Assembly: GCA_002269645.1 (NCBI GenBank)
Contig: NIVC01000027.1
Span: 620,001-684,000 of the forward strand
Reading direction: 5' to 3'
DNA from: Macrostomum lignano
Lineage: Eukaryota
Length of the DNA: 64,000 bases
This document shows, piece after piece, positions 12,777-57,400 of the stretch. Under the pieces are notes generated by a model that was not told where the DNA came from, did no database searches, and was given only the letters and a program-made list of their open reading frames with translations. Numbering within the stretch: position 1 is the stretch's first letter; each line of letters opens with the position of its first letter. The position numbers were made by a program, and so were the translations under genes.

Positions 12777-12826
<50 letters not shown>

Positions 12827-29683: not shown

Positions 29684-29790
29684 CTGAGCTGAGACACCTG
29701 CGGCTGAGCTGAGACACCTGCGACTGAGCTGAGACACCTGCGACTGAGCTGAGACACCTGCGACTGAGCTGAGACACCTGCGGCTGACGG
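29684..29790. repeat. 20-bp repeat (CTGAGCTGAGACACCTGCGA) x5 just upstream of the ATG
   Basis: Five copies here; one partial copy in the paralog at about 42325. Confidence 0.9.
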
Positions 29791-29805: not shown

Positions 29806-32498
29806 ATGGCAGAGCGAGGGAAGCCACCATTTCCTGACAAAAAAGTAAGTAAAGTTCAAGTAAAAAAACTAAAAGTATAATCATATTTGTAGTCTTGACT
29901 GCAGTTGCAGGAACTCACTCACATGTTTGAATGTGCAGCTTGGGTGCCTCAATTGCAGTTGCAGGAACTCACTCACATGTTTTAATGTGCAGCTTGGGTG
30001 CCTCAATTGCAGTTGCAGGAACTCACTCACATGTTTTAATGTGCAGCTTGGGTGCCTCAATTGCAGTTGCAGGAACTCACTCACATGTTTTAATGTGCAG
30101 CTTGGGTGACTCAATTGCAGTTGCAGGAACTCACTCACATGTCTGAATGTGCAGCTTGGGTGCCTCAATTGCAGTTACAGGAACTCACTCAGCCGGACCC
30201 CACCAACCGGGCAAGCGTTGGATCCTCACCAGCCGATCTCCAAACTCTCGCTAACGCCGTCATCCGAGGTGACTTCGGCCAGGTGCGGCGGCTGGCAACG
30301 CGCCAGCTGGTCACCAGCGCTGACGCAGCTCGTCGGACCGTCCTCATGCTGGTGGCCGACGCTCCTGAGACTCCCGTACAGACTGAAAAGTGCATCTTGT
30401 ACTTATTTGAGCTGGGCGCGAACCCCAAGGCGGCTGACGCGAACGGCGACACGGCTGCGCACCTGGCAGCCCGGCGGGACCACCTGCGGCTGCTGACGCT
30501 GCTGTCGTTCGATGCGAAGTGGCTGCGGAACGACAACGGCGCCACTCCGCTGATGGAGGCGGCGCGGACTGGAAGCTGGAAATGCGCCAAGCACCTGCTG
30601 CACCTGCTCAGGCAGAGGAGGTCCAACGAGTGCAAGGAGCACGAAAACTCGAAGAGATCGCGGCTGCTCGGACTGCAGGATCGCGAGGGTCGGACGGCGT
30701 CGGACCTGGCGAGGCTCAGCGGCCACTCAGAGCTGGCCAGCTACATCGAGCGGTGAGTGAGCAGTTCGCTGCTGTGTCCATCAAGTTCTGCAGGATTCGG
30801 CTGGCTATGGTGGCCAGAGCTGCAGTCTCAGGCCAGCCAATCAGAGCCAGTCAGCTGAGCTTGTCTCTGTCTGACTGCTTGATGGGCGAGAGCTGTGATT
30901 AGCTGGCTGCCTCCCAGCCAATGGGGTGCCGGTTGATCTCAGTCGAGAATGGAAGCTGTAGGGCCTCGGTGTGCAGTGAGAGTGTGTGGGTTGAGTTGCA
31001 GATGGAGAACTGAGAGGCTGTGCGTGAGTGCTTTGTGAGACATGGTGAGATGGAAGGAAACTCATGCTGCAGAAATGGAAAATGAGCTGCATGTGAGAAG
31101 TCGGATGCGCTCTCGCCAATGCTGGTTGTTGCAGAGCTGCTTTAGTCTTCTTGGAAACTCCATCTGCGAGCTGCTCAGATAATCAGAAAATTCAGTTATC
31201 TAAATTTATTACCAAAATTCTATTGTAGAACTATAAACTTTTTAATGGCTGTCAAAGTTGTAAAATTTTAGAAAATTTGCTGCTCATTTTGGCTGTTGCA
31301 GGGAACAGCACATACAGCTACAGCACACAGCTACAGCACACAGCTACAGCACACAGCTACAGCACACACAGCTACAGCACACAGCTACAGCACACACAGC
31401 TACAGCACACAGCTACAGCACACAGCTACAGCACACACAGCTACAGCACACAGCTACAGCACACAGCTACAGCACACACAGCTACAGCATGCAAATTATC
31501 CCTCATTGCCTCAATTCGCATCCCCTCAGCCCCCCGTTCCTGGAGCGCTGGGACAAAGTTCGCCTCATCGGTCGCGGAGGCTCTGGCAAAGTCCACGAAG
31601 TTCGAACTGACACGGGCGTAACGTGCGCTGCCAAGACTCTCAAACTGCCTGTGCAGCTCGGTGATGACCAAACCCCTGTGAGCAAGGAGATCCACAGAGC
31701 TGTCGAGAGCGAGAGAAACCTGTGCCGACTGCGGCATCCCAACATCGTCAGGTTCTTGCACATCGCTCAGCCGAAGCCCGCCAAAGTCGTTGTGTTCATG
31801 GAGCTGCTGGACGGCCGAAGCTTGGAGAGGTTTATCGGCAACAAGCCGCTGGACGAGCCAAAGATTCGAGACTTCAGCGAGCAGGTGAGCATTGTGCATC
31901 CTTGATGCTCCTGTTCCATGTTTTCATGAATGATGACTGCTCACTGACCGACCGCTCGCAGATCTGCAGCGCGCTGCTCTACCTGCACAGCCAGCAGCCG
32001 CCCGTGATCCACAGAGACATCAACTGCTCCAACATAATGGTTCGTGCTGACAACACGCGAATCAAGCTGATCGACTTCGGCCTGTCAATCAAGCTGGAGC
32101 AGTCAGTCAGCCACATCTCAGGCTCCACTCCGTTTCCCAAAGGCACTCTGAACTTCATGGCGCCAGAGCTGCTCGGAGCGGGAGAGTCGGACAGCGTGCA
32201 GTACAGCAGAGAGTCGGACATCTGGGCGTTCGGCTGCTCGGTCTTCCAGATGACGTCTGGTGCGAGGCCGTTTTCAAAGTGCAGCAACCCATGGGCGGTG
32301 CCCGAGCTGCTCAAGAAGAGCGGCGCCCCTGCCCTGCCGGATGGCCGGTCCGCAGAGCTTCAGGATTTCTACAGCCGCTGCACCGCCAAGGATCGCAGGA
32401 GGAGAAAATCCGCACAGGAGCTGCTGGAGCACGAGTTCCTGACTGGCGGGAGGCTGCAGCCGGGATTATTCAGCTCGCTTTTCAGCGCAAGGAAATGA
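29806..32498 (+). CDS. Ankyrin-repeat + Ser/Thr kinase (MAP3K/STE11-like) fusion protein, about 500 aa
   Basis: Exons 29806-29844 (GCCATGG, MAERGKPPFPDKK|gtaagt), 30181-30752 (ANK repeats GDTAAHLAA, GATPLMEAA, GRTASDLA; cg|gtgagt), 31530-31884 (IGRGGSG, AAK, E of helix C, LRHPNIV, VFME), 31962-32498 (HRDINCSN, DFG, GTLNFMAPE, SDIWAFG). Intron phases 0/2/0 match; total 1503 nt = 501 codons. Confidence 0.85.
29901..30192. repeat. 54-bp intronic tandem repeat whose last unit supplies the exon-2 acceptor
   Basis: GCAGTTGCAG|GAACTCACTCACATG... starts at 29911, 29965, 30019, 30073, 30127 and 30181. Confidence 0.92.
31305..31488. repeat. ACAGCTACAGCAC(AC) 13/15-bp satellite, short copy
   Basis: Same repeat as 44727-45922. 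Confidence 0.95.
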
Positions 32499-33460: not shown

Positions 33461-35416
33461 CAATGCATGTGTTGGGCTGTTTATTTACTCAGATACTCCA
33501 GTTCCTGCTGATGCCATCTCACTGAGCTCACTGAGCAGCAATGCATGTGTTGGGCTGTTTATTTACTCAGATACTCCAGTTCCTGCTGATGCCATCTCAC
33601 TGAGCTCACTGAGCAGCAATGCATGTGTTGGACTGTTTATTTACTCAGATACTCCAGTTCCTGCTGATGCCATCTCACTGAGCTCACTGAGCAGCAATGC
33701 ATGTGTTGGACTGTTTATTTATTCAGATACTCCAGTTCCTGCTGATGCCATCTCACTGAGCTCACTGAGCAGCAATGCATGTGTTGGACTGTTTATTTAT
33801 TCAGATACTCCAGTTCCTGCTGATGCCATCTCACTGAGCTCACTGAGCAGCAATGCATGTGTTGGACTGTTTATTTACTCAGATACTCCAGTTCCTGCTG
33901 ATGCCATCTCACTGAGCTCACTGAGCAGCAATGCATGTGTTGGACTGTTTATTTATTCAGATACTCCAGTTCCTGCTGATGCCATCTCACTGAGCTCACT
34001 GAGCAGCAATGCATGTGTTGGACTGTTTATTTATTCAGATACTCCAGTTCCTGCTGATGCCATCTCACTGAGCTCACTGAGCAGCAATGCATGTGTTGGA
34101 CTGTTTATTTATTCAGATACTCCAGTTCCTGCTGATGCCATCTCACTGAGCTCACTGAGCAGCAATGCATGTGTTGGACTGTTTATTTATTCAGATACTC
34201 CAGTTCCTGCTGATGCCATCTCACTGAGCTCACTGAGCAGCAATGCATGTGTTGGACTGTTTATTTACTCAGATACTCCAGTTCCTGCTGATGCCATCTC
34301 ACTGAGCTCACTGAGCAGCAATGCATGTGTTGGACTGTTTATTTATTCAGATACTCCAGTTCCTGCTGATGCCATCTCACTGAGCTCACTGAGCAGCAAT
34401 GCATGTGTTGGACTGTTTATTTATTCAGATACTCCAGTTCCTGCTGATGCCATCTCACTGAGCTCACTGAGCAGCAATGCATGTGTTGGACTGTTTATTT
34501 ATTCAGATACTCCAGTTCCTGCTGATGCCATCTCACTGAGCTCACTGAGCAGCAATGCATGTGTTGGACTGTTTATTTACTCAGATACTCCAGTTCCTGC
34601 TGATGCCATCTCACTGAGCTCACTGAGCAGCAATGCATGTGTTGGACTGTTTATTTATTCAGATACTCCAGTTCCTGCTGATGCCATCTCACTGAGCTCA
34701 CTGAGCAGCAATGCATGTGTTGGACTGTTTATTTACTCAGATACTCCAGTTCCTGCTGATGCCATCTCACTGAGCTCACTGAGCAGCAATGCATGTGTTG
34801 GACTGTTTATTTATTCAGATACTCCAGTTCCTGCTGATGCCATCTCACTGAGCTCACTGAGCAGCAATGCATGTGTTGGACTGTTTATTTACTCAGATAC
34901 TCCAGTTCCTGCTGATGCCATCTCACTGAGCTCACTGAGCAGCAATGCATGTGTTGGACTGTTTATTTACTCAGATACTCCAGTTCCTGCTGATGCCATC
35001 TCACTGAGCTCACTGAGCAGCAATGCATGTGTTGGACTGTTTATTTACTCAGAGGCTCCAGTTCCTGCTGATGCCATCTCACTGAGCTCACTGAGCAGCA
35101 ATGCATGTGTTGGACTGTTTATTTACTCAGATACTCCAGTTCCTGCTGATGCCATATCACTGAGCTCACTGAGCAGCAATGCATGTGTTGGACTGTTTAT
35201 TTACTCAGATACTCCAGTTCCTGCTGATGCCATCTCACTGAGCTCACTGAGCAGCAATGCATGTGTTGGACTGTTTATTTACTCAGATACTCCAGTTCCT
35301 GCTGATGCCATCTCACTGAGCTCACTGAGCAGCAATGCATGTGTTGGACTGTTTATTTACTCAGATACTCCAGTTCCTGCTGATGCCATCTCACTGAGCT
35401 CACTGAGCAGCAATGC
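33461..35416. repeat. 78-bp satellite, about 25 copies
   Basis: Unit CAATGCATGTGTTGGACTGTTTATTTA(T/C)TCAGATACTCCAGTTCCTGCTGATGCCATCTCACTGAGCTCACTGAGCAG; period 33461 to 33539. Confidence 0.97.
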
Positions 35417-35654
35417 AAAACTGCAATTCAGATATTCGGAAACAAAGCACTCATTATTTTCAACACTTAGCTGGGGTTTGCTCTCAGTCACGCAGCTACA
35501 GGACTCAAAAGCTGCGGACTGATGCAGGAGAGACGCTGGGAATTACAGAAACCTCCCAAGAAATCCCGTATAGAATTCGAATTTCGGTGGGCGAGACTGC
35601 AAGATGGAGAGCAGAGGCTGGTCTTCAATGCAGCTCCACCCCCTGTCCCAGTCC

Positions 35655-41176: not shown

Positions 41177-41805
41177 AGAGCAGCCCTGACAATCTTTATG
41201 TCAGCAACTCTGCCCCATAGCAGCCCTGACACTCTGTATGTCAGCAACTCTGCCCCGCAGCCGCCCTGACACTCTGTATGTCAGCAACTCTGCCCCGCAG
41301 CCGCCCTGACACTCTGTATGTCAGCAACTCTGCCCCACAGCAGCCCTGACAATCTTTATGTCAGCAACTCTGCCCCACAGCAGCCCTGACAATCTTTATG
41401 TCAGCAACTCTGCCCCACAGCAGCCCTGACACTCTGTATGTCAGCAACTCTGCCCCACAGCAGCCCTGACACTCTGTATGTCAGCAACTCTGCCCCGCAG
41501 CCGCCCTGACACTCTGTATGTCAGCAACTCTGCCCCGCAGCCGCCCTGACACTCTGTATGTCAGCAACTCTGCCCCGCAGCCGCCCTGACACTCTGTATG
41601 TCAGCAACTCTGCCCCGCAGCCGCCCTGACACTCTGTATGTCAGCAACTCTGCCCCACAGCAGCCCTGACAATCTTTATGTCAGCAACTCTGCCCCACAG
41701 CAGCCCTGACAATCTTTATGTCAGCAACTCTGCCCCACAGCAGCCCTGACACTCTGTATGTCAGCAAATCTGCCCCATAGCAGTCCTGACAATCTTTATG
41801 TCAGA
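41177..41805. repeat. 40-bp minisatellite (CAGCAGCCCTGACACTCTGTATGTCAGCAACTCTGCCCCA) with an internal CTGACA/TGTCAG inverted repeat
   Basis: Direct reading. Confidence 0.95.
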
Positions 41806-41858
41806 AAAACTGTGAGACTTCAGAAGAGCCGAAGCGTGAAAATTTAAGCTGAAGTAAC

Positions 41859-43640
41859 AGCTGTGAGATTGTGAAAGCACTCACTGACTACTGTTGAGTA
41901 GCAGTGCAAGTCTTGTAGTTGAGTCTGGGCAGAACACTTAATGAACAATAATGTGCTCAAGCTGCTTATGTTTGCGCTGATCTGCTTCACCGCAACAAAG
42001 TATTTTCAAATTCGAAATGCAATATCGATAATGGACTTGGCCTAAAATGATAATTATTTATATTGGATTTTGATTGCACCAATTTTGCAAGAAAATCCGC
42101 AGTCGCACACTGACTGCTTTAAGTAGCCACGCACTGACATTGCAGCAGTTCTGCTGTTCCCTCAGAGCCAATGGGAGAGGCAGAAAGCTGGGCAGAGGCG
42201 GCCGCACAAGCCAGCAAAAGCAGCCGCAATCTGAGCAGGCAGGGTGAGAAGGAATTCGCTGCAGCTGCTCCAGGGCCAATAAAATCTGCTGCAGAGGCGG
42301 CCGCTGCCCTGCCGGACTCTCGGGCTGAGCTGAGACCTTGGACGCCATGGAAGAGCGATTTAGAAAGATTTTTGAAGAAAGAGTAAGTAAAGTTAAAAGG
42401 AGCAAATTAAAGCATAATTTTTGTGGGTTCAATTGCAGTTGCAGGAACTCGCATGTTTGAATGTGCAGCTTGGGTGCCTCAATTGCAGTTGCAGGAACTC
42501 ACATGTTTGAATGTGCAGCTTGGGTGCCTCACTTGCAGTTGCAGGAACTCACTCACATGTTTGAATGTGCAGCTTGGGTGCCTCAATTGCAGTTGCAGGA
42601 ACTCACTCACATGTTTGAAAGTGCAGCTTAGGTGCCTCAATTACAGTTGCAGGAACTCACTCGCATGTTTGAAAGTGCAGCTTAGGTGCCTCAATTACAG
42701 TTTCAGGAACTCACTGAGCCGGACCCCAAAAACCGGGCAAGCGTCGGAGACTCACCAGCCGATCTCCAGACTCTCGCCTACGACGTCATCCGAGGTGACT
42801 TCGGCCAGGTGCGGCGGCTGGCAACGCGCCAGCTGGTCACCAGCGCTGATGCAGCTCGTCCGACCGTCCTCATGCTGGTGGCCGACGCTCCTGAGACTCC
42901 CGTGCACACTGAAAAGTGCATCTTGTACTCATTTGAGCTGGGCGTGAACCCCAAGGCGGCTGACGCAAACGGCGACACGGCTGCGCACCTGGCAGCCCGG
43001 CAGGACCACCTGCGGCTGCTGACGCTGCTGTCGTTCGATGCGAAGTGGCTGCGAAACGACAACGGCGCCACTCCGCTGATGGAGGCGGCGCGGACTGGAA
43101 GCTGGAAATGCGCCAAGCACCTGCTGCACCTGTTCAGATCGGAGATGTTGAATGGATCATGTTGTGGAGGTTGTTTAAGTACGTTCGTGCTGTTCGGACT
43201 GAAGGATCGCGAGGGTCGGACGGCGTCGGACCTGGCGAGGCTCAGCGGCCACTCAGAGCTGGCCAGCTACATCGAGCGGTGAGTGAGCAGTTGAGCAGTG
43301 AGGTGTGCAGTGAGAGTGTGTGGGTTGAGCTGCAGATGGAGAACTGGGAGGCTGTGCGTGAGTGCTTTGTGAGACATTGTGAGGTGGAAGGAAACTCATG
43401 CTGCAGAAATGGAAAATGAGCTGCGTGTGAGAAGTCGGATGCGCTCTCGCCAATGCTGATTGTTGCAGAGCTGCTGCAGTCCTCTTGGAAACTCCATCTG
43501 CGAGCAGCACAGATAATTGGAAATTTCTGTTTACTAAATTTATCATGAAAATTAAATTGTACAACTTAAAATTTTTTGTGACAGTAGTTGTCGTATTTGA
43601 GAAAACTGCAAATTCGCTGCTCCTTTTTACTGTTTCAGGG
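41859..43640 (+). repeat. Segmental duplication copy 2
   Basis: Colinear with 29203-31303; lacks about 170 bp present in intron 2 of copy 1 (about 30775-30965). Confidence 0.92.
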
Positions 43641-46600
43641 AGATGGGGCTGGGTATAGATGATGATGGCTCTATCTCCGGCCTGGGAGACCAGGTGAGCG
43701 GCATCTGCGGTGCCGATGCGGCTGCAGCTGAGCAGCTGTGCTCAAATTTCCCGTTCCCCTTTGCAGGAGGCAGATCGACAGGAACTGCAGCGGCTGGCCG
43801 AGGCGGGCGACTCGGCGGGGCTGCGGCGAGCGGCGACCCGCGGCAGCTGCGACCTGCCTGACAGATCGGGTCTCACCCCGTTGATGTGGGCAGCTCGGAA
43901 CAGCTCGTGCGGTGATGAGGCTCTGTGGGAGCAGCTGGTGCAGCTGGGTGACCCCACCTGTGCGGATAGATGGGCTCGCAGTTGCCTGCACCATGCAGCC
44001 AGGGCTGGCAATTCTGCCGCAGCCTCCGCTCTGCTGGCTGCCGGAGCCTCCGCCAATGCCAGGGATGACTCTGACCCCACGCCCCTCATGTGGGCAGCCA
44101 AATTTGCGCCCCCCGCCACCGCCGCCGCAGTCGGTCGGGTTCTGCTGGACTCAGGGGCGGATTGGAGCCTGAACAGAAACGGCAGGACTGCGCTCGATTT
44201 GGCCGCACAGAATGGAAAGAGCAAACTGGCTGAGCTGCTGCGTGGGTGAGTTTCCATGGCGACTGAGAATGTCTCTCTGACTTTGATTTATCATTGATAA
44301 ACATTATGCTGTAATTTATGATTGAATATTGAGCAGCTGACTGCAGTTGCTCTGAGTGGGCATTTTTACATTTTTGTAGTTTACATTTTTGTAGTTTGTA
44401 GTTTAAATGGGCAGCAGAAACTGACTGAGCTGCATTGAGGGAGTTTGCAGTGCATTTTGACTGCAGATTGCCAGTTGAATAATAATGCTCAGCTGCCTGC
44501 GAGCTGTGAGACACCAAGCAAGCGATTTTCTGTAGCATTAGAGTTCAATTTTAACATGTGAATTTTTTGTGTATTTTTTTCAATTTTTTGTAATTATTTA
44601 ACAGAAAAAACACTGGCACAAAGCATGTGCTCCCATGTGAATTTCTGTGACTTCAGACTCCGCACTGCCCATTTAGGTACGACGGCAAGAATTACTTTAA
44701 CGAACCTCTGGAACTGCCGTGAGTTCCTTCAGCACACAGCTAAAGCACACAGCTACAGCACACACAGCTACAGCACACACAGCTACAGCACACACAGCTA
44801 CAGCACACAGCTACAGCACACACAGCTACAGCACACAGCTACAGCATACAGCTACAGCACACAGCTAAAGCACGCAGCTACAGCACACAGCTACAGCACA
44901 CACAGCTACAACACACAGCTACAGCATACAGCTACAGCACACACAGCTACAGCACACAGCTAAAGCACGCAGCTACAGCACACAGCTACAGCACACACAG
45001 CTACAGCCACACAGCTACAGCACACAGCTACAGCACACACAGCTACAGCACACAGCTAAAGCACGCAGCTACAGCACACAGCTACAGCACACACAGCTAC
45101 AACACACAGCTACAGCACACACAGCTACAGCACACAGCTAAAGCACACAGCTACAGCATACAGCTACAGCACACAGCTACAACACACAGCTACAGCACAC
45201 ACAGCTACAGCACACACAGCTACAACACAGCCACAGTACACACAGCTACAGCACACACAGCTACAGCACACAGCTAAAGCACGCAGCTACAGCACACAGC
45301 TACAGCACACACAGCTACAACACACAGCTACAGCACACACAGCTACAGCACACAGCTAAAGCACACAGCTACAGCATACAGCTACAGCACACAGCTACAA
45401 CACACAGCTACAGCACACACAGCTACAGCACACACAGCTACAACACAGCCACAGTACACACAGCTACAGCACACACAGCTACAACACACAGCTACAGCAC
45501 ACACAGCTACAGCACACACAGCTACAGCACACAGCTACAGCACACACAGCTACAGCACACAGCTACAGCATACAGCTACAGCACACAGCTAAAGCACGCA
45601 GCTACAGCACACAGCTACAGCACACACAGCTACAACACACAGCTACAGCACACACAGCTACAGCACACAGCTACAACACACAGCTACAGCACACACAGCT
45701 ACAGCACACACAGCTACAACACACAGCCACAGTACACACAGCTACAGCACACACAGCTACAATACACAGCTACAGCACACACAGCTACAGCACACACAGC
45801 TACAGCACACACAGCTACAGCATACAGCTACAGCACACACAGCTACAGCACACACAGCTACAACACACAGCTACAGCACACACAGCTACAGCACACACAG
45901 CTACAACACAGTTACAGCACACCGAGGTGAGAAAACTGCATAGCGTTTTGGCTTATTACAGGCGAAGAGTTGTCACGGACCATGCTCATGACGAGGAACC
46001 GAGTGATGATGAAAGTTCTTCGTGAGTGATTTTTCTAATTATGTGGTATTTAAAAACTATTTACTCATTGAATTGTGCAATTGAATTTATTCCTGTGTCA
46101 ATTTTTAAAAATTCAGAAACCCTAAAGGAGCCACGAGCGTTAAAGCAGTTCGACATCAACCGTCAAGGTGGTTAATACATAATTATTCGTGTGCATTTAA
46201 AGTGTAAAACCACATTGAGTATCTGCTGTATTCCATGCAGGTACGAAGAAGATTTCTATCCAGTGACGAACCCGCAAGGCTACTGCTTGATCATCAACAT
46301 CAGCGAGTACGACTCCGGAAGTGACATCACATTAAATTTTGAAGAGCGTCAAGGTTCAGATCGTGATGTTGACCGAGTGAAGCAGATATTCGAGAGGCTG
46401 CGCTTCATCGTCAAGATAAAAAAGGACCTCACTGCTGAGCAGTTGGATGATTTCCTCCATGAGATTAAAAAGTCACCGGACCTTGCCAAGCACGGCAGTT
46501 TTGTCTGCTTCTTGATGGCGCACGGCAGCCACGACTGCATCTACGGTAAGAACGGCGTGCCCTGCGAAATTCGAAACCTGACGGAAAAGTTCAAGGTAAG

Positions 46601-47242
46601 CCACTATAGCTAATAATATCATGTTTGTTATTTTATGAGCGTATATGAGCAATAACAGGGATATGAAAATCCCTAAGAATTCTTAAGAGTAGAAACCAAT
46701 GATATTGAAACGAGAGTAATGTTTAGCCTGTTTTTCGTCGCTGCAAAAGGCTAGGCTAAACTGTACTCTTAGTTTATAAGGCCGAAGACTCCACTGCCAA
46801 TACCATCGCATCACAGAGCTCTGTCTGCCGCAGCCTTGAAGGAAAGCCGAAGGTGTTCTTCATCCAGGCCTGTCGCGGCAGCCGTCGCGACCGAGCTGTT
46901 GCTCGGAGCTCTCGTGAGCAAACGGACGAGGCAGGCGCTCCGGTGTACAACTCCGCAATCCGCCCTGCAGAGGGCGACTTTCTGCTCTGCTACGCCACCA
47001 CTCCAGGCTCAGCCGCCTTTAGAAACATCGACTCGGGCTCGCGGTACGTGCAGACTGTTTGCGAGTTCATCGAGAAGTACTTCCGTGAGCTCGACCTAAT
47101 TACCATTATGACCAAGGTGAGCGGCTACTTGCACAAAAACCCGGTTCAGGTGAAAGGCGGCCTGTATCACGTTGTTCCGCAGAAAGTCGACCAGCTTTCA
47201 AGCCTGGTTAGCTTCGATCCAGAAAGAGCTCGGAAAGTTTAG
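42347..47242 (+). CDS. Ankyrin-repeat caspase (two ANK modules + caspase p20/p10), about 677 aa
   Basis: Exons 42347-42382, 42707-43278 (ANK module 1), 43639-43693 (linker), 43767-44245 (ANK module 2: GLTPLMWAA, SCLHHAA, PTPLMWAA, GRTALDLAA), 45962-46021, 46117-46167, 46241-46595 (GYCLIIN, RQGSDRD, FLMAHG), 46817-47242 (GKPKVFFIQACRG, DFLLCYATTPG, AFR..GS.YV). All introns are GT-AG with matching phases 0/2/0/2/2/2/0; total 2034 nt = 678 codons. Confidence 0.85.
42433..42718. repeat. 50/54-bp intronic tandem repeat containing the exon-2 acceptor (paralog of 29901-30192)
   Basis: GCAGTTGCAGGAACTC units; the last unit reads TTTCAG|GAACTC at 42706/42707. Confidence 0.9.
44727..45922. repeat. ACAGCTACAGCAC(AC) satellite, long copy (about 1.2 kb)
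   Basis: Direct reading; lies in the intron between ANK module 2 and the caspase linker exon. Confidence 0.97.
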
Positions 47243-48764
47243 AGGCTACTTAATGAAACTGTTTGGTGGTCTCTGAGACACCCAAGCAACATGAGTTTCC
47301 ACACCGAAAGCAGTTCATGGGGACTGAGAACTGAAAGTGGCAGCTTCAATCCAACTCTAGCCATGACTCTCCACTCTCTCCTCACCTGCGGCCTTGTGAC
47401 AAAAATCGCATCACCCTCAGTTGAGATGAATTTCGTTATTTGGGGCTGAGATCTGAGAAAATTTGGCCACTGGTTTCGGGGTGGAAACTTTTACATGTTG
47501 CTGAGTGAGTAATATTTGAACTATACATATCTAAGTTTCGCTCTGCTCCCTGTAGCCTAGATAATCTAGATGTTATTGGTTTTGATATATACTATCTTTC
47601 TTGCTGTTTAACAAGCTTAACAATTCTCAATTACGTTAATTTTTGGCCCTTCTGCTCAAGCGCACTTTATCCTAATTGTTAATCGCCTCCCATGTCTACT
47701 TAGGTTGATCTGTTTAACCTTTTTAACCTAAGTAGTTTTTTATAATCGTTTTTTTCTTTCAGTTCAAGTTTTTAACCCTGTGATGAATTGATTCTGAACT
47801 ACAAAAGTTTAATCAAAATCTTTCTGAAAAATAAACCTGTTTTTATTTTAGTTTTATCCCGCGGTAAAAAACTTTTCATCGCAAACCAAATAAAATTGAT
47901 TGTTGCTTGGTGACTCCTTGATGAGCAGTTGGCAACTGCAGGCACAGGTGCGCCATCGGATGCTTAGGAATGTGCCTGAGATATAAACTGCAGACAGATA
48001 AGAATAAAAAATAATAGAAAGATTGGTGGAACATCTGGCCAGTGGGTCAAAGCGAGGGTGGATTGATAAACTCTGTTCAATTGTATGCGTGCACATGCAG
48101 CTGGCTAAGAGAGCCCTGTGAGCAGGACTGCTCAAGCTCGCAGCTGAACAAAACACGAGCTGAGCGAGCATTTGCTACAAAATGCAACAAATGCTTGACA
48201 AGCCAGTGTTTTATGAGCCAAAGGCAGGAAAATGAAACTGATGGAGAGGCGGACTCGAATGTGCAATAGAATTGAATTTTTACAGATGCGCAACAAAACA
48301 CAAGCTGAGCAGAGAGAGAGGGAGAGAGAGAGAGATGCAGAGCGAAGTGCATCGAAGAGACGCTAAAAAAACTGAGCGCCCACCCCACCCCCGAGAGCCC
48401 AAGGCACGACTCAAGGCAGTGCAAGAGGTCTGTGACTCACTTTTGAGTAAAATAAATGTACGTAGTATAGCGAATCTTCAGGTGCAAACAAATTTCCTGA
48501 AAAATTCAATCCAGCCCATCTCTTTCACGGCAAATAATTCTTATGAGTTATGAGTTCTTACATTCTTATGAGTACTATAAGTAGATTATTGTAAGCAATA
48601 TTGCTTGGGGAGATTTAAAAGTATTTTTGGACTGCTAGAATATACATCCACAGGGACAAAGAAGCGATGCATAGAGATTGATGGCAGCTGCTGTACCGTG
48701 TTTTTTTCACGCTTTTGGAGGAAAGGTGGGTGTCCCTTCAGTATCGATATTAACCCCTCCAGCC

Positions 48765-50853
48765 CTGCACCCACCCTACATCCCAGCCTGTCTCTCCCTG
48801 CCCCCACCCTGCATCCCAGCCTGCCTCTCTCCCTGCCCCTCACACTACATCCCAGCCTGTCTCTCCCTGCCCCTCACCCTGCATCCCAGCCTGTCTCTCC
48901 CTGCCCCCACCCTACATCCCAGCCTGTCTCTCCCTGCCCCTCACCCTACATCCCAGCCTGTCTCTCCCTGCCACACCCTACATCCCAGCCTGTCTCTCTC
49001 CCTGCTCGTCACCCTACATCCCAGCCTGTCTCTCCCTGCCCCCACCCTACATCCCAGCCTGTCTCTCCCTGCACCCACCCTACATCCCAGCCTGTCTCTC
49101 CCTGCCCCCACCCTGCATCCCAGCCTGCCTCTCTCCCTGCCCCTCACACTACATCCCAGCCTGTCTCTCCCTGCCCCTCACCCTGCATCCCAGCCTGTCT
49201 CTCCCTGCCCCCACCCTACATCCCAGCCTGTCTCTCCCTGCCCCTCACCCTACATCCCAGCCTGTCTCTCCCTGCCACACCCTACATCCCAGCCTGTCTC
49301 TCTCCCTGCTCGTCACCCTACATCCCAGCCTGTCTCTCCCTGCCCCCACCCTACATCCCAGCCTGTCTCTCCCTGCACCCACCCTACATCCCAGCCTGTC
49401 TCTCCCTGCCCCCACCCTGCATCCCAGCCTGCCTCTCTCCCTGCCCCTCACACTACATCCCAGCCTGTCTCTCCCTGCCCCTCACCCTGCATCCCAGCCT
49501 GTCTCTCCCTGCCCCCACCCTACATCCCAGCCTGTCTCTCCCTGCCCCTCACCCTACATCCCAGCCTGTCTCTCCCTGCCACACCCTACATCCCAGCCTG
49601 TCTCTCTCCCTGCTCGTCACCCTACATCCCAGCCTGTCTCTCCCTGCCCCCACCCTACATCCCAGCCTGTCTCTCCCTGCCCCACCCTACATCCCAGCCT
49701 GTCTCTCCCTGCCCCTCACCCTGCATACCAGCCTCTTTCCCTGCCCCCACCCTACATCCCAGCCTGTCTCTCCCTGCCCCCACCTACATCCCAGCCTGTC
49801 TCTCCCTGCCCCCACCCTACATCCCAGCCTGTCTCTCCCTGCCCCCACCTACATCCCAGCCTGTCTCTCCCTGCCCCCACCCTACATCCCAGCCTGTCTC
49901 TCTCCCTGCTCGTCACCCTACATCCCAGCCTGTCTCTCCCTGCTCCTCGCCCTACATACCAGCCTGTCTCTCCCTGCCCCCACCCTACATCCCAGCCTGT
50001 CTCTCTCCCTGCTCGTCACCCTACATCCCAGCCTGTCTCTCCCTGCTCCTCGCCCTACATACCAGCCTGTCTCTCCCTGCCCCCACCCTACATCCCAGCC
50101 TGTCTCTCTCCCTGCTCGTCGCCCTACATCCCAGCCTGTCTCTCCCTGATCCTCGCCCTACATCCCAGCCTGTCTCTCCCTGCCCCTCGCCCTACATCCC
50201 AGCCTGTCTCTCCCTGCCCCTCGCCCTACATCCCAGCCTGTCTCTCCCTGCCCCTCGCCCTACATCCCAGCCTGTCTCTCTCCCTGCTCGTCGCCCTACA
50301 TCCCAGCCTGTCTCTCCCTGATCCTCGCCCTACATCCCAGCCTGTCTCTCCCTGCCCCTCGCCCTACATCCCAGCCTGTCTCTCTCCCTGATCCTCGCCC
50401 TACATCCCAGCCTGTCTCTCTCCCTGATCCTCGCCCTACATCCCAGCCTGTCTCTCTCCCTGATCCTCGCCCTACATCCCAGCCTGTCTCTCTCCCTGAT
50501 CCTCGCCCTACATCCCAGCCTGTCTCTCTCCCTGATCCTCGCCCTACATCCCAGCCTGTCTCTCTCCCTGATCCTCGCCCTACATCCCAGCCTGTCTCTC
50601 TCCCTGATCCTCGCCCTACATCCCAGCCTGTCTCTCTCCCTGATCCTCGCCCTACATCCAAGCCTGTCTCTCTCCCTGATCCTCGCCCTACATCCCAGCC
50701 TGTCTCTCTCCCTGATCCTCGCCCTACATCCCAGCCTGTCTCTCTCCCTGCCCCTCGCCCTACATCCCAGCCTGTCTCTCCCTGCCCCTCGCCCTACATC
50801 CCAGCCTGTCTCTCCCTGCCCCTCGCCCTACATCCCAGCCTGTCTCTCTCCCT
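48765..50853. repeat. ~33-36-bp pyrimidine-rich minisatellite (CCCTACATCCCAGCCTGTCTCTCCCTGCCCC) with a ~304-bp higher-order block
   Basis: Identical ORFs at 48941 and 49245 are offset by 304 bp. Confidence 0.96.
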
Positions 50854-51702: not shown

Positions 51703-52549
51703 CAAATCCAACTCCCAAATGACAAAGTCAGACACACAGGCTGAGAACTTTCAGCAGTTTTATGAGTTGAGCTGTTTGAGATCTTGAAAAGTAGAAATTC
51801 AGATAAATTATTAATAATGTGAGAAATCTCATTGCACTGATAATTTAGGAATTGAGCACAAAAGAAAACACTGGGTGTGAGGCTGAGCTGTCAACTCAAT
51901 TCAGCTCTGATGGCAGCAGAGGCAAATGCAGATTAGCAGACAAAAATATGTCCCAATTAATAAATAGTAAACTGCACATACTTTACATTGCTGCACTGCA
52001 GTGCCATCCAATATTGATGTGGCAGAGAAACTGAAACAGCAATGATTTGATCTGAGCAATGCAGGTGAATATAAATGATTAATGCAGAACTGCTGTGTCA
52101 GTCTGTTGCACCCAATAAATCAATCCAAAGATTATCAAAGGTGGATTACAAAATGCACACCTGAACTGTGTATAAAGATTAGCAAAATAAGCTGTGAGTA
52201 CAAAATGCAAAATTATTAATAAATTTATAAATAAACAACATTTGAGCACAAAGCGCCATTGATGAGGTGCCACAGCAGGGTGAAGTGAAGGCAGCAAAGT
52301 CAGACACAAATTCATGCAGAATGCAGTCAAGCGAGCCATATTCAGTACTTGCAGTAGCACAGCTGGGTACCGGGCACCTAATTGGTCAGTGAAATACGCG
52401 ATGCCCAGGCGGTGCCCTCAGCGGATCATTTGCAATTTTCCTGACATCTGCAGGATTATAAATGTTGTTCAATCAGTTCAGGTGTGTCCAATCGATGTCT
52501 GCAATGGATGGTCTGCCCATTGAAGCCTCTGAATTGATCTGAACTACAA

Positions 52550-52920
52550 ATGACCTTATATGACCCCCACAGACCTAATAATGACCCTAAATGACTCCAA
52601 AGAACTGAATCATGACCTTAAAGGACCTACGGGACCTAATCATATCCTTTGATGACCTCAAAGATCTAATCATGACCTTAGATGACCTCACAGATCTAAT
52701 CATGACCTTGAATGATCCACCATACCTAATCATAAACTCTGATGACCCCACAGACCTAGGAATGACTTTAGATGGCCCTGAAGACCCAAAAGTGACCTTA
52801 AATGACCCCCACACTAAAACAAAAGGTTCTAGAGATTTTGAAAGTATGCCTATGATGAACCAATAATTAAAACGTGACCTAAATTGACCCGGCTCCCGAA
52901 ACACTCTCAAACCATGACCT
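52550..52920. repeat. Degenerate ~21-bp ATGACC-rich repeat
   Basis: Recurring atgacc/atcatgacctt; 7-aa periodicity in ORF 52612. Confidence 0.7.
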
Positions 52921-53014
52921 AAATAAAATTATAAAACCTGGAAACCCGTATCTTGACTCGAGATGACCCAGGCATCAAGAGCGTGACCTCATTTGACCCC
53001 GTCGACCTCCGCCC

Positions 53015-54433
53015 TCACCCGCTCGCCGCCGCCTCCGCAGGCGCTTCGACTTCGCCGCCGCCGCAGGCCGCCACGTCGCCGCCCTCCCGAGCCGCCCGAA
53101 GTCCCTGCTGGAAGTCGCCGACGCGCCTCAGCCTCAGCAGCTGCTCGCCTCTCAAAGCGTCATCAGCAAGCTGAGCATCGGCCAGTCTGGCCTCCAGAGC
53201 CGCCAGCTGCAGCCGGGCTTCATCCCGCTCGGCTGTCAGGGCGGCGATGACGGCGTCCTGCTGGTCCAGCCTCGCCGTCGCCTCGCCCAGCCTCTCGTTC
53301 AGGCGGGCGACTCTCGCCTCGCCGCGTCGTCGGCACAGGTCGAGCTGGCGACTGGCGAGCTTGTTGGCTGTGCTCAGGTACTCAGTGAGGCGCTCTTCGT
53401 GCTGGTCCTGAGGGCAATATTGGGACTGGGGTCTGCTGGGGTCTGGGTGTGCTCAGGTGGGATCTGGGTGTGCTCATGTGGGATCTGGGTGTGCTCAGGA
53501 GGGAACTGGGTGTGCTCAGGTGGGATCTGGGTGTGCTCATGTGGGATCTGGGTGTGCTCAGGTGGGATCTGGGTGTGCTCAGGTGGGATCTGGGTGTGCT
53601 CAGGTGGGATCTGGGTGTGCTCAGGTGGGATCTGGGTGTGCTCAGGTGGGATCTGGGTGTGCTCAGGTGGGATCTGGGTGTGCTCAGGTGGGATCTGGGT
53701 GTGCTCAGGTGGGATCTGGGTGTGCTCATGTGGGATCTGGGTGTGCTCAGGTGGGATCTGGGTGTGCTCAGGTGGGATCTGGGTGTGCTCAGGTGGGATC
53801 TGGGTGTGCTCAGGTGGGATCTGGGTGTGCTCAGGTGGGATCTGGGTGTGCTCAGTTGGGATCTGGGTGTGCTCAGGTGGGATCTGGATGTGCTCAGGTG
53901 GGATCTGGGTGTGCTCAGGTGGGATCTGCTAGGGTCAGACATGCAGGATCTGCTAGGGTCAGACGGGATCTGCTGGGAACAGACGGGATCTGCTGGGAAC
54001 AGACGGGATCTGCTGGGATCAGACGGGATCTGCTGGGAACAGACGGGATCTGCTGGGAACAGACGGGATCTGCTGGGGTCAGACGGGATCTGCTGGGAAC
54101 AGACGGGATCTGCTGGGGTCAGACGGGATCTGCTGGGAACAGACGGGATCTGCTGGGGTCAGACCGGATCTGCTGCCCCACTCACCAGCTGCTTGTCCTT
54201 CTGCTGCTGCAGCTGGGCCTCAAACCGTTCCTCCATGGTCTCCATCAGGCGGTCCCGCTCGGCGATCAGCTCCCGGCGGATCTGCAGCTCGCGGGCCTCC
54301 ACCGCCTCGTCCAGCTGGCGGCGGGACTGCCGCAACGAGGCGATGACCGCCAGCAGCTCCTGGGGTGGAGTGGGGGGACTGTGGCTTATGAGGGTTACAG
54401 CTGACAGATAGGCAGACAGACAGACACTAAGAC

Positions 54434-54474
<41 letters not shown>

Positions 54475-57400
54475 CAGCAGACACACAACAGATGTCATAA
54501 GTAATAGACACCCCTATTTATGGTAAGTGAATCCCAGTTTCCCTTCTAGAATTTTCTATAATACACTTCTTAGTTATATGTCTATGGTCTCCGACTCCGA
54601 ACCTGTACAACTAAGTTTTGTTTGAGCTGCGCCAGAGCTAAATTCAGTGTTAACCTTCTCTTGCTATCTTTCTTAAGACTCTCAATAAACGCCGAGTTAT
54701 TACAATCAAATAAGACATATGCCTAGTTCCTGTCTGGTAGTTCAAGATGAAGAACGTCCTGATGGAGCGAGAACTTTGGGAAGTTGTTGATGGTACTGAG
54801 ACACTTGCTGAGGACGCGACCAACGAGGTCAAAGTGCAGTTCAAGCGGCGTGCGAACAAAGCCCTAGCGACTATCGTATTGGCTGTTGCGGATAGTCAAA
54901 TTCATCTAATTGAGGATGCAGAAACTCTGAAGGAAGCGTGGGATAAGCTTCAAGCATATTTCGAGCAGAGTTCGCTGGCAAATAAATTGTATCTTAATCG
55001 GAAACTACAAGCGTTCAAGATGGTGGAAGGTGCATCCATGCAGGAGCATGTTAATCAGTTCAAGGATATCGTCAAACGACTGTCGGCTATCGGGGCAGGT
55101 GTTCCCGAGGACTATCAAGTCACGATTTTGCTAAACAGTTTGCCGAAGTCATATGACGGGTTGATCACTGCTCTGGAATCGCGGGCGGACGACTTGACGA
55201 TGAATTTCGTACAATTAACAATCATCGTACTAAGACAATTCAACAATCAACAGCACCAGAGTGTCAGACCAAAATGTATCAAAGCAAGATTGGTAGCCAA
55301 AGGCATCAAGGTTGTATTGCTCCAGCTAGAATCCTGTCTTCCACAGTCGTTCTAAGCACATTGATATCCGTCACCATTTAGTGCGTGGGAAGTTGGTCGA
55401 TGGAACTTTAAAGTTACTTTACTGTCCGCCAGAGGAAATGGTCGCTGACATTCTCACCAAAAGCACTGTCTAATGCCAAGTTTCAAGTACTCAAGGAACT
55501 GATTCATGTTCGCTAATATAACTGCTAACTTCTTTATCTAACTTTGATATTCAAGACACAATATGATTACAATATAAGACTTTCTTAATAGAGACACACA
55601 ACAGACTCACAACAGATACACAAAAGACGCACAACAGACACACAGCAGACACAGAGCAGACACAGCAGACGCACAAGCAGACCTACCTCCTTATCCATCT
55701 GGGCCAAGTCCGCCATCTCAGCCTCCTCTTCATCAGCGTAAGTCACATCCAAAGCCTCGAGCTCATCGTCCTCATCGGCCAGTCTCTGCTCCCCATCTTG
55801 TCTTCTCCCAGTCCTGACGCCGCCGCCGGCCCTCCCAGACGCCGCAGACTTGGACGCCACTCCGTACCCAGGAGACGCGGTGGCAGCAGCCGCCAGCCGC
55901 AGGCGCTTGGGCGTTGGCTCGCTCACGATGACGCTGCGCGCCAAGCTGCTGAACTTCAGCGCGTTGAAGGTCTCGTCGAACAGCGCCGGGCACTGGGAGA
56001 TGTTGACAATCATCGCCGCCTGCCCGCTGCCGCTGAAGTAGGGCTGCAGCAGGCGGGTGAGCTTCGAGTCCCGGAACGGCACCAGCATGGAGGCTCGGGG
56101 ATTTCGCTGATTTCTCTGCAGAGTCTCAAGGCAGCGGCGCAGGGTCAGCAGGCTGGAGTTGATGCTGCCGGCCTCTCGGGTGCGCTCGCCTGCCGTGCCG
56201 GCGTGGCGCTGCCGCTCCGAGCCGGCGAGGTCGCAGAAGGTCAGGCTGGACACCTGCGGGACGGCGGGGCACTGGGATCTGGAATGGGGGATATGGGTGA
56301 TGGGAGATGGGATCTGGGAGATGGGATTTGGGAGAAGGGATCCGAGAGACGGAAGAGAGGATATGGGATTGGGGACCTGCGATTAAGGATTTGAGATTGA
56401 TGATCTGGGATTGGGGATCTGGAAGATGGGATGTGGGATAAGGACGATTAGGATTTTGGAGATAAGATTTGGGAGATGGGATCTAGTATACAAGAGATTG
56501 GTTATGGGAGATGGATCTGGGGTTGGGGATCTAGGGTTGGGGATCCGGGATTGGGGATCAGAGATTGGGGATCTGGGATGTGTGAGACGGAAGAAATGAG
56601 ATGGTATAGTGTACTATTATGTTGGGCTTCTCCTTTGCTCTCGCTTTAGCCTTCCCCCACGTGCCTCGGCATCGTTTCTACGCCCAAGCACTGTTACGCA
56701 ACAGTGGCACGCTGTGCTCACTAGGCTCGCATGTACTCAAACTACTATATATATGCTTAAATATAAGGCCAAGAAAGCTCAATTCCGGCACCCACACAAG
56801 CGCACTACAGATGGGATGTGGGAGATGGGTGATGTGAGATGGCATTTTGGATCTGGGATTAAGGATTTTGGATTGGAGATCTGGGATTGGGAATCTGGGA
56901 TTGGGGATCTGGGATTGGGGATCTGGGATTGGGGATCTGGGATTGGGGATCTGGGATTGGGGATCTGGGATTGGAGATCTGGGATTAGGAATCTGGGATT
57001 GGGGATCTGGGATTGGGGATCTGGAGTCTGGTGCCAAAGGCAGTGAGTGAGCAAAGGACTCGGCCCCGCAAACCTTCTCACCTGACTGAAGCGAGGCGAA
57101 GGTCGGTCAGCGCAGCGCACCAGCCTGATGGAGAACAGCGCGTGACTCCTGGAAGACTGCTGGTTCAGCTTGGTGGCAGCCAGGTGCTGATTGTGTTTGC
57201 CTAGCAGCGCCAACCTGAAGGCCTCATCAGCGCTTGACACCGGCAGGCAGCGAAGGCCTTTGACGTACACGGAGCCCGTGCGGTCCGCCCGCAGCTCCAA
57301 GGCCGTCCTGCTGGGCGCCCGACGGCTCAGCGGCTCCAGCAGGTCGTAGACGATTTCGTTGTAGATCTCGGCGCAGGACACCCACACTGAGCAGCGGCTG

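What the first reader, a model, noticed from the sequence alone, without database searches (positions are those of the whole stretch)
42347..47242. Caspase with an ankyrin-repeat prodomain instead of CARD/DED
Seen: eight phase-consistent exons give a 677-aa ORF with two ANK modules followed by an apparently intact caspase: catalytic His (FLMAHG), catalytic Cys (QACRG), and the Asp-specificity Arg residues in RQGSDRD and AFR. Established: animal initiator caspases normally carry CARD or DED prodomains. Inference: a non-canonical initiator caspase whose recruitment is set by ankyrin-ligand binding.
Basis: partly seen in the sequence, partly recalled or inferred. Interest (0 to 1): 0.85.

Follow-up and report, generated by a model that had tools for sequence, protein, structure and literature searches.

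The report
Flatworm caspase with ankyrin-repeat prodomain
This is a real, intact gene of the free-living flatworm Macrostomum lignano that joins two blocks of ankyrin repeats to a caspase protease, but the gene is already in GenBank and this "ANK caspase" design has been described in flatworms, so it is a genuine oddity that is not new and whose function is untested.

Summary
Window 42347-47242 (+) encodes an ankyrin-repeat + caspase protein with every catalytic and Asp-pocket residue intact.

The window is base-for-base Macrostomum lignano scaffold NIVC01000027.1. My model is 100% identical to GenBank PAA93481.1 (BOX15_Mlig000156g3, "hypothetical protein"), an RNA-seq-derived model. ANK and caspase therefore lie on one mRNA.

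The architecture is not new. "ANK caspases" of flatworms were described in Genome Biol Evol 2024 (PMC11463336), which credits Lee et al. 2014 for Schistosoma and offers the same "possible initiator" idea.

Two things go beyond that paper:
- It calls ANK caspases restricted to parasitic flatworms, yet free-living M. lignano carries several deposited full-length ones (seven read here, further cluster members listed).
- The same ~380-aa ANK module, with its exons and introns, is also fused to MAP3K-like kinases. One such kinase gene lies 10 kb upstream in this window.

The catalytic domain forms a Macrostomum-specific clade outside caspase-3/7 and caspase-8. Its function and its relation to the parasite clade remain untested.

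Verdict: real, ordinary for this lineage, a new member of a known kind. Interest is about 0.3.

The parts
42150..42336 (+). Conserved 5' region (putative promoter / 5'UTR) shared with the upstream paralogue
   Evidence: 98.4% identical over 187 bp to window 29509-29695, more than the exons at 90%. An in-frame stop lies 5 codons before ATG 42347.
42347..42382 (+). Exon 1, MEERFRKIFEER (start codon)
   Evidence: GT donor. Identical to the N-terminus of PAA93481.1.
42429..42715 (+). 54-bp tandem repeat (5.5 copies) in intron 1 that repeats the exon-2 acceptor TTGCAG|GAACTCAC
   Evidence: TRF. The same repeat lies at 29900-30191 in the paralogue.
42701..43278 (+). Exon 2: ankyrin block 1 (aa ~30-208)
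   Evidence: Acceptor 42701 gives the deposited protein; 42707 is an in-frame alternative. Pfam Ank. AF2 helix pairs with pLDDT mostly >85.
43130..43207 (+). Hypervariable patch inside ankyrin block 1 (aa 156-181)
   Evidence: 40 of 78 nt and 19 of 26 aa differ from the paralogue at 30181-30752, against 19 of 494 nt elsewhere. Part of it has low pLDDT (aa 161-169 of the 691-aa model).
43639..43693 (+). Exon 3: linker between the two ankyrin blocks
   Evidence: aligned to EMRLVV..ISGLT..QE of paralogues.
43767..44245 (+). Exon 4: ankyrin block 2 (aa ~221-382)
   Evidence: Pfam Ank_2 best stretch. tblastn to paralogues. AF2.
44677..44718 (+).
   Evidence: Conserved in P0001, P0002, P0004, P0026 and in ANK-kinase P0005. 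Read-through gives ...EPLELP-stop, a 397-aa ANK-only product.
44733..45922 (+). 1.2-kb CACAGCTACAGCA microsatellite filling intron 5, the boundary between the shared ANK exons and the effector exons
   Evidence: TRF. The same repeat precedes the kinase exons at 31305-31489 and the caspase exons of paralogue locus L001.
45962..46021 (+). Exon 6: acidic linker with the conserved VVTD|H motif (D403)
   Evidence: Predicted disordered.
46117..46167 (+). Exon 7: 17-aa linker exon, phase-symmetric, possibly a cassette
   Evidence: Present in PAA93481.1. Absent from models P0121, P0123 and P0012. Skipping it keeps the frame.
46241..46595 (+). Exon 8: N-terminal part of the large subunit, with R470 and H528
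   Evidence: Pfam and PDB alignment to caspase-3.
46817..47242 (+). Exon 9: QACRG (C571), intersubunit linker with EQTD|E (D589), small subunit with R621, stop TAG
   Evidence: The linker is disordered in AF2 (aa 571-598 of the 691-aa model).
29806..32498 (+). Upstream paralogue: ankyrin block 1 fused in frame to a MAP3K-like kinase (hand model, 502 aa; exons 29806-29844, 30175-30752, 31530-31884, 31962-32498); ANK block 2 is deleted
   Evidence: tblastn, sequence, translation. The kinase's best PDB hit is MAP3K5/ASK1, E=3e-27. This exact product is not in the protein collection.

Best explanation
This is the expressed M. lignano gene BOX15_Mlig000156g3 (PAA93481.1). It encodes a long-prodomain caspase of the flatworm 'ANK caspase' type.

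Shown:
- One mRNA encodes two ankyrin blocks (about 8-9 repeats), a roughly 40-50-aa disordered acidic linker and a complete caspase domain.
- The His/Cys dyad and the Arg-Gln-Arg Asp-binding pocket are intact.
- The ANK module with its exons and introns is shared with MAP3K-like kinase genes, one of them 10 kb upstream.

Inferred:
- The protein is a zymogen.
- The ANK module binds an unknown partner that concentrates the protease.
- Proximity-driven dimerisation then leads to autocleavage at EQTD589|E in the intersubunit linker and at VVTD403|H, which releases the ANK module.
- The protease then cleaves after Asp in a cell-death or stress/immune pathway.
- ANK-kinase paralogues may feed on the same partner.
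For: - Gene model: it is identical to a deposited protein on the identical scaffold. That annotation derives from RNA-seq assemblies cut at trans-splice and poly(A) sites (PMC5730564).
- Domains: Pfam C14 at 1.2e-44 and Ank_2 at 5e-33. The closest solved structure is caspase-3, E=1.6e-38, with R, H, Q, C and R aligned. These residues are invariant across 10 divergent M. lignano relatives.
- Structure: AF2 gives confident ANK and caspase domains. The prodomain linker and the intersubunit linker are disordered.
- Cleavage motifs: Asp motifs are conserved among paralogues. These are V/I-x-T-D|H in the linker and EQTD/ETID/VSTD/VTFD between the subunits.
- No caspase-only ORF is possible.
- A long prodomain together with placement outside the effector clade (bootstrap 97 for caspase-3/7 without it) fits an apical rather than an executioner role.
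- The literature proposes the same role for ANK caspases.
Against: - There are no functional data of any kind.
- The best sequence matches are effector caspases-3/7, and the tree does not join the protein to caspase-8, -2 or -9.
- ANK repeats are not known oligomerisation platforms in the way CARD and DED are.
- The closest separate paralogue, P0001, has QAGRG (Cys to Gly), so part of the family is catalytically dead.
- dN/dS of 0.88 for ANK block 1 between the two window copies is compatible with relaxed constraint.
- The cleavage sites are read from motifs only.
Confidence: 0.5

Rival explanations
1. The ANK module is not an activation or recruitment domain. Instead it is a substrate-targeting or cis-inhibitory module on an otherwise executioner-like caspase. 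It would bring the protease (and, in paralogues, a kinase) to the same target protein, or mask the active site until the linker is cut by another caspase. The ANK-only read-through isoform would act as a decoy.
For: The catalytic domain's best matches are caspase-3/7. The same ANK module sits on kinases, which suggests a shared target rather than a caspase-specific platform. ANK domains bind active caspases in trans, as in Caiap-Caspa (PMC5662874) and the designed ankyrin inhibitors cited in PMC11463336. Read-through at the exon-5 donor gives an ANK-only product, and deposited P0003 ends at exactly this point.
Against: The domain lies outside the caspase-3/7 clade. The conserved xxTD motifs in both linkers resemble self-processing sites of apical caspases. 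AF2 gives no confident ANK-caspase packing (pTM 0.58, linker pLDDT below 50).
Confidence: 0.25
2. The locus is a young, drifting duplicate in a large lineage-specific expansion within a partly duplicated genome. It would be transcribed but of little or no function, and the fusion would carry no special mechanism.
For: At least 40 clusters of M. lignano proteins carry this ANK module. Mlig_3_7 has 180 Mb of duplicated blocks. dN/dS is 0.88 for ANK block 1 between the window copies. P0001 and P0020 lost the catalytic Cys. The upstream copy lost ANK block 2. Exon 2 carries an aberrant patch unlike all paralogues.
Against: All nine exons are open with canonical splice sites. Every catalytic and pocket residue is retained. 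The caspase part is 97% identical to paralogue P0440, and outside the patch ANK block 1 differs from the neighbouring copy at only 10 of 164 residues. A transcript exists.
Confidence: 0.15
3. The fused ORF is an annotation artefact. The real products would be an ANK-only protein ending at the exon-5 donor and separate downstream transcripts, with the StringTie/TACO assembly joining them across the repetitive intron 5.
For: Intron 5 is a 1.2-kb microsatellite. The annotation pipeline merged transcripts across repetitive gaps of up to 10 kb in some cases. The older MAKER-type model broke exactly there. ANK-only models exist (P0003).
Against: A caspase-only ORF cannot start. There is no in-frame Met, and the spliced-leader ATG is out of frame at exons 5-8. 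Exon phases match across the junction. The same exon chain is annotated independently in many paralogues and in a second annotation (P0122, P0124 and P0155 join ANK directly to caspase).
Confidence: 0.07

Closest known systems
Platyhelminth 'ANK caspases' (Genome Biol Evol 2024, PMC11463336; first noted in Schistosoma by Lee et al. 2014 as cited there)
   Same: Both have an N-terminal ankyrin-repeat prodomain in place of CARD/DED on a caspase with p20 and p10. Both are flatworm lineages. Both are proposed as possible initiators. That paper places a M. lignano relative (the 'kinase pro-domain' caspase) as sister to the clade.
   Different: The paper states the clade is restricted to parasitic flatworms and that free-living ones lack it, whereas this gene and its paralogues are from free-living M. 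lignano. I could not retrieve any parasite sequence, so common origin versus convergence is untested.
M. lignano ANK-kinase-caspase PAA47029.1 (P0036, BOX15_Mlig018903g3), probably the 'protein kinase-like pro-domain caspase' of PMC11463336
   Same: Same ANK module type at the N-terminus and same caspase family: 37% identity, joined with bootstrap 57 in the NJ tree.
   Different: It has a kinase domain inserted between ANK and caspase and is 1060 aa. The window gene has no kinase domain; in this window the kinase is on the neighbouring paralogue.
Human caspase-3 / caspase-7 (closest solved structures, e.g. 2J32, 1I4O)
   Same: Same fold by sequence (E=1.6e-38). The catalytic His/Cys, QACRG, the S1 Arg/Gln/Arg and an Asp-containing intersubunit linker are all shared.
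   Different: The window protein has a prodomain of about 440 aa against about 28 aa. It lies outside the caspase-3/7 clade. The caspase-3 pocket residues W206 and W214 (my knowledge of caspase-3 numbering) are F and R here, so specificity beyond P1 may differ.
Caspase-8 / DED caspases and fish CARD-caspase-8 ('caspase-22')
   Same: Long prodomain. Profile scores are similar to those for caspase-3/7. ANK caspases are reported as sister to DED caspases.
   Different: The window protein has no death-fold domain and is not inside the caspase-8 clade in my NJ tree.
Caiap (CARD + 16 ANK inflammasome adaptor of fish to marsupials, PMC5662874)
   Same: Its ankyrin repeats are functionally coupled to a caspase: the ANK domain binds active Caspa.
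   Different: In Caiap the coupling is in trans, whereas here ANK and caspase are in one chain. Caiap has a CARD for self-oligomerisation. No homology beyond generic ANK repeats was shown.
ANK + caspase models elsewhere (Homarus americanus XP_042223340.1; jellyfish Sanderia malayensis; the annelid Alitta virens per PMC11463336)
   Same: Same domain pair in predicted proteins.
   Different: These are scattered single cases with different repeat numbers. The one case included in my tree, the lobster (Homarus) model, lies outside the Macrostomum clade. The literature judges the annelid case convergent, and the jellyfish model was not placed.

Membership tests
Caspases (peptidase family C14A) | Sequence match to the caspase domain above the curated threshold | tested here: met
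   PF00656 scores 153 bits against a cut-off of 21.4, E=1.2e-44. Caspase-3 matches at E=1.6e-38.
Caspases (peptidase family C14A) | Catalytic His-Cys dyad (xxHG ... QACxG) | tested here: met
   H528 lies in FLMAHG and C571 in QACRG, aligned to caspase-3 SHG and QACRG. Both are invariant in 10 relatives.
Caspases (peptidase family C14A) | Asp-binding S1 pocket (Arg, Gln, Arg) | tested here: met
   R470, Q569 and R621 align to caspase-3 R64, Q161 and R207 (numbering from my knowledge). They are invariant in the family alignment.
Caspases (peptidase family C14A) | Large and small subunit separated by a linker with an Asp processing site | tested here: inconclusive
   There is a disordered linker (aa 571-598 of the 691-aa model) containing EQTD589. 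An Asp motif is conserved in paralogues. Cleavage itself is not testable here.
Caspases (peptidase family C14A) | Asp-directed proteolytic activity | not testable with these tools
   Needs recombinant enzyme.
Flatworm ANK caspases (PMC11463336) | Ankyrin-repeat prodomain and caspase domain in one polypeptide | tested here: met
   The nine-exon ORF is identical to transcript-derived PAA93481.1. Pfam finds Ank and C14.
Flatworm ANK caspases (PMC11463336) | Membership of the monophyletic ANK-caspase clade with the parasitic-flatworm sequences | not testable with these tools
   No neodermatan sequence could be retrieved. There is only an indirect hint: the paper places a M. lignano relative as sister to that clade.
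Flatworm ANK caspases (PMC11463336) | Restricted to parasitic species (as stated by the authors) | tested here: not met
   The host is free-living M. lignano. This argues against the stated restriction rather than against the resemblance.
Initiator (apical) caspases | Long prodomain | tested here: met
   About 440 aa lie before the catalytic domain.
Initiator (apical) caspases | Death-fold recruitment domain (CARD or DED) | tested here: not met
   Pfam finds only Ank families and C14.
Initiator (apical) caspases | Catalytic domain groups with caspase-8/-10, -9 or -2 | tested here: inconclusive
   The NJ tree puts it in a Macrostomum-only clade outside caspase-8. Deep nodes are unsupported, and caspase-9 and vertebrate caspase-2 were not sampled.
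Initiator (apical) caspases | Activation by induced proximity / dimerisation | not testable with these tools
   Needs biochemistry.
Effector caspases-3/-7 | Short prodomain | tested here: not met
   About 440 aa of ANK and linker precede the catalytic domain.
Effector caspases-3/-7 | Inside the caspase-3/7 clade | tested here: not met
   The caspase-3/7 clade, including Dugesia caspase-7, has bootstrap 97 and excludes the window protein.

The most novel reading that the evidence does not exclude
In Macrostomum, one fast-evolving ankyrin module serves as a common recognition or recruitment cassette. It carries a hypervariable surface patch. Exon shuffling at a microsatellite-filled intron has coupled it combinatorially to caspases, to MAP3K-like kinases, to both at once, or to nothing (ANK-only decoys). 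If so, this is a lineage-specific death or immune signalling system that does with ankyrin repeats what other animals do with death-fold domains. It would also show that ANK caspases predate parasitism in flatworms.
Probability: 0.2. Interest if true: 0.6.

Novelty: new member of a known kind. Interest (0 to 1): 0.3.

Why it matters
The finding matters modestly, for three reasons.

- ANK caspases have been presented as an innovation of parasitic flatworms linked to loss of the DED caspase. Finding many transcript-supported ANK caspases in a free-living, early-branching flatworm weakens that link. It suggests either an older origin or repeated invention.
- M. lignano has transgenesis and RNAi. 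It could therefore be the practical system in which to find out what an ankyrin prodomain does for a caspase, which nobody has tested.
- The shared ANK module on caspases and MAP3K-like kinases, with a common exon-intron scaffold, is a clean natural example of effector-domain swapping.

None of this changes the general picture of caspase biology.

Tried and rejected
- First homology search. The best full-length hit was only 68% identical, so for a while I took the locus to be unannotated or from another Macrostomum species. That was wrong. The 90% cluster is represented by a 300-aa fragment (P0121), and the full-length deposited protein only surfaced through the listing of cluster members.
- Swamped profile search. 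In the exhaustive profile search the ANK columns entered the profile, so giant ankyrin proteins swamped the list. It still revealed further ANK-caspase families and non-flatworm cases.
- Caspase-domain-only searches. Searches returned no parasitic-flatworm ANK caspase, so orthology with the published clade could not be tested. The paper's supplement is not held.
- Independent caspase start. I rejected this because there is no in-frame Met. Retention of intron 6 from its ATG is out of frame (read by hand from the sequence). The spliced-leader ATG is out of frame at exons 5-8.
- Upstream ATG as a first exon. I considered ATG 42171 (MGEAES, myristoylation-like) as an alternative first exon. Its donor is in phase 1 and does not fit exon 2, and the only nearby acceptor gives a stop (read by hand from the sequences).
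- Inversion or frameshift in the patch. I tested whether the hypervariable patch is a small inversion or a compensated frameshift. It is neither.
- Exact look-ups. The 502-aa ANK-kinase model, the exon-7-skipped form and the ANK-only form are not in the protein collection.
- Large ORFs elsewhere. Most large bacterial-style ORFs elsewhere in the window are translated tandem repeats with no Pfam hit.

Full report
**Observation.** Reading window 41800-47800 and assembling GT-AG exons by hand gives one open frame from ATG 42347 to TAG 47242. My first model had nine exons and 691 aa.
- Pfam finds Peptidase_C14 (E=1.2e-44) and four Ank_2 stretches (E=5e-33).
- The quoted motifs RQGSDRD, FLMAHG, QACRG and AFR(N) are all there.
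- They align to R64, H121, Q161/C163 and R207 of human caspase-3, the best solved match at E=1.6e-38 (caspase-3 numbering from my own knowledge).

**Whose gene it is.**
- The caspase part is 100% identical to UniProt A0A1I8GRA2 of Macrostomum lignano, a 300-aa Met-less model. Its first 20 residues are a read-through of window intron 5, so it is a truncated model and not evidence for an independent start.
- The 90% cluster that this fragment represents also holds PAA93481.1 / A0A267H5A3, "hypothetical protein BOX15_Mlig000156g3", 693 aa.
- Using the acceptor six bases upstream (42701, adding FQ), my nine-exon model is identical to it residue for residue.
- The gene lies at NIVC01000027.1:662347-667242 in assembly Mlig_3_7. 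The fetched 24.9 kb are base-for-base identical to window 32347-57242.
- The GenBank annotation of that assembly comes from RNA-seq transcript assemblies cut at trans-splice and poly(A) sites, with ORFs called on the transcripts (PMC5730564). The ANK and caspase exons are therefore on one assembled mRNA.
- Independent arguments agree:
  - No in-frame Met exists between ANK block 2 (last Met at aa 329 of the 691-aa model) and FLMAHG.
  - The ATG that the M. lignano spliced leader carries at its 3' end (PMC8629364) would be in frame only at exons 2, 4 and 9, not at 5-8.
  - Exon phases fit.
  - Paralogues annotated in two different gene sets show the same exon chain.

**Anatomy** (693-aa numbering; the AF2 model used the 691-aa version).
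- ANK block 1 spans about aa 30-208.
- A short helical connector follows.
- ANK block 2 spans about aa 221-382.
- A disordered, acidic linker spans about aa 396-436.
- The caspase domain starts at about aa 447 and runs to the C-terminus.
- The intersubunit linker is disordered.
- Conserved Asp motifs among paralogues are V/I-x-T-D|H in the prodomain linker (VVTD403 here) and EQTD589 (ETID, VSTD or VTFD in others) between the subunits. They look like self-processing sites, but this is inference.
- Caspase-3 W206 and W214 are F and R here, so extended specificity may differ.

**Family context.**
- All close relatives are M. lignano proteins.
- The same ANK module, 75-82% identical over aa 1-390, occurs in four arrangements:
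  - with a caspase: seven full-length deposited proteins were read here (PAA93481.1, PAA68165.1, PAA93441.1, PAA51405.1, PAA46841.1, PAA56209.1 and PAA47029.1, the last with a kinase domain between ANK and caspase), and cluster members of similar length were listed but not read (PAA63914.1, PAA75565.1, PAA82384.1, PAA90489.1, PAA71516.1);
  - with a protein kinase, in at least 17 clusters;
  - with kinase plus caspase (PAA47029.1);
  - alone.
- More distant ANK-caspase families also exist in this species (PAA73468.1, PAA92194.1, PAA94436.1), as does a Rho-GTPase-caspase (PAA63380.1).

**The neighbouring paralogue.** A paralogue lies 10 kb upstream in the window, on the same strand (29806-32498).
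- It shares a 98%-identical 5' region, the 54-bp tandem repeat in intron 1, the ANK-1 exon (90%) and intron 2 (91%).
- It then jumps through the same CACAGCTACAGCA microsatellite into two kinase exons, in frame.
- ANK block 2 is lost.
- The kinase is STE-like. Its best solved match is MAP3K5/ASK1, E=3e-27.
- Full-length ANK-kinases such as P0005 even keep the YDGK exon. Caspase and kinase genes therefore share exons 1-5, and the microsatellite intron marks where the effector exons were exchanged.
- Exons 5, 6 and 7 are all phase 2-2, as is the pair 3+4. This explains in-frame variants such as P0155, which lacks ANK block 2, and models without exon 7.

**Placement.** A neighbour-joining tree of catalytic domains (237 columns, 100 bootstraps) puts the window protein in a Macrostomum-only clade.
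- Support is 90 for the core clade and 57 when PAA47029.1 is included.
- The clade lies outside the caspase-3/7 clade, which includes planarian caspase-7 (bootstrap 97), and outside caspase-8.
- Deep nodes are unresolved. I had no caspase-9, no vertebrate caspase-2 and no parasite ANK caspases.

**Literature.** [quoted passage not shown] (PMC11463336) makes these points:
- It describes "ANK caspases" as a maximally supported flatworm clade, sister to DED caspases.
- It credits Lee et al. 2014 with first noting them in Schistosoma.
- It proposes that they may be initiators.
- It mentions one annelid ANK caspase as convergent.

What my data add is that M. lignano, a free-living species, has many ANK caspases in public databases. 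The "kinase pro-domain" protein also carries the ANK module, assuming it is PAA47029.1, which I did not confirm.

**Mechanism.**
- My best reading (about 0.5) is an apical-type zymogen. Its ANK module binds an unknown partner, and induced proximity then leads to self-cleavage at the two xxTD sites.
- The main rival (about 0.25) is that ANK is a targeting or cis-inhibitory module on an executioner-like protease. The module's presence on kinases and the ANK-caspase binding known for Caiap (PMC5662874) support this.
- Lesser rivals are a drifting duplicate and an assembly artefact across the repetitive intron. For the former, dN/dS is 0.88 for ANK-1 and P0001 has QAGRG.

**Verdict.** The feature is real and correctly read in outline. 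However, the gene is deposited and the architecture is a described flatworm type. It is a new member of a known kind, with interest about 0.3. The most novel reading still open is a combinatorial ankyrin-cassette signalling system predating parasitism, at probability about 0.2.

Noticed in passing
window 29806-32498 (+): This is a tandem paralogue in which ankyrin block 1 is spliced in frame to a MAP3K-like (STE group) kinase. ANK block 2 and the YDGK exon are deleted, and the deletion ends in the same microsatellite that fills intron 5 of the caspase gene. My 502-aa hand model is not in the protein collection.
   Followed up: yes
window 43130-43207 (aa 156-181): A 78-nt patch of ankyrin block 1 is 51% different from the neighbouring paralogue, while the rest of the exon is 96% identical. 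It has the same length, no frameshift and no inversion. The window version (LFRSEMLNGSCCGGCLSTFVLFGLKD) is unlike that of every other paralogue seen.
   Followed up: partly
window 42150-42336 and 29509-29695: These 187 bp upstream of both genes are 98.4% identical, more than the coding exons. They contain a conserved upstream ATG (MGEAES...) with a GT donor whose phase does not fit exon 2.
   Followed up: partly
window 42429-42715 and 29900-30191: A 54-bp tandem repeat in intron 1 of both genes repeats the exon-2 acceptor (TTGCAG|GAACTCAC) about five times. The acceptor fits the published spliced-leader acceptor motif, and the leader's terminal ATG would be in frame. Model P0008 starts exactly at this acceptor without a Met.
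   Followed up: partly
window 44716-44724 (exon 5 donor): The donor GTGAG overlaps a TGA, so an unspliced intron 5 ends the protein as ...EPLELP. That gives a 397-aa ANK-only product. Deposited ANK-only protein PAA77278.1 (P0003) ends at the homologous point.
   Followed up: partly
L001 (NIVC01003438.1) 10001-15978; proteins P0001, P0020: This distinct paralogue (68% identical overall; closer paralogues P0440 and P0442 surfaced later) has QAGRG instead of QACRG, making it a likely catalytically dead pseudo-caspase. Its locus has the same microsatellite before the caspase exons.
   Followed up: partly
proteins P0189 (PAA63380.1) and P0036 (PAA47029.1): The same M. lignano caspase family also occurs behind a Rho-type GTPase-like N-terminal region (read by eye from the sequence; not scanned against Pfam) and behind ANK + kinase in one chain. 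The caspase domain has therefore been coupled to several different N-terminal modules in this species.
   Followed up: no
UniProt A0A1I8GRA2 (P0121) versus window 45900-46021: The public 'Caspase-3' entry for this locus is a 5'-truncated model. It starts inside the intron-5 microsatellite and skips exon 7. Because it is the cluster representative, it hides the full-length protein in clustered searches.
   Followed up: yes
window 6914-9164 (+): ORFs with a BTB_2 (potassium-channel tetramerisation) domain and an Ion_trans domain suggest a voltage-gated K+ channel gene upstream.
   Followed up: no
window 52426-57242 (-) and 54747-55355 (+): A kinesin gene is annotated on the minus strand downstream. 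A copia-type gag ORF (E=1e-45) lies inside its span on the other strand.
   Followed up: no
whole window: The scan with score >= 300 returned 37 rows (overlapping rows can describe one array), including arrays of 2 kb and more (e.g. 2418-4477, 33460-35417, 48763-50853, 61116-63561). Most long bacterial-style ORFs in the window are translations of these repeats.
   Followed up: partly
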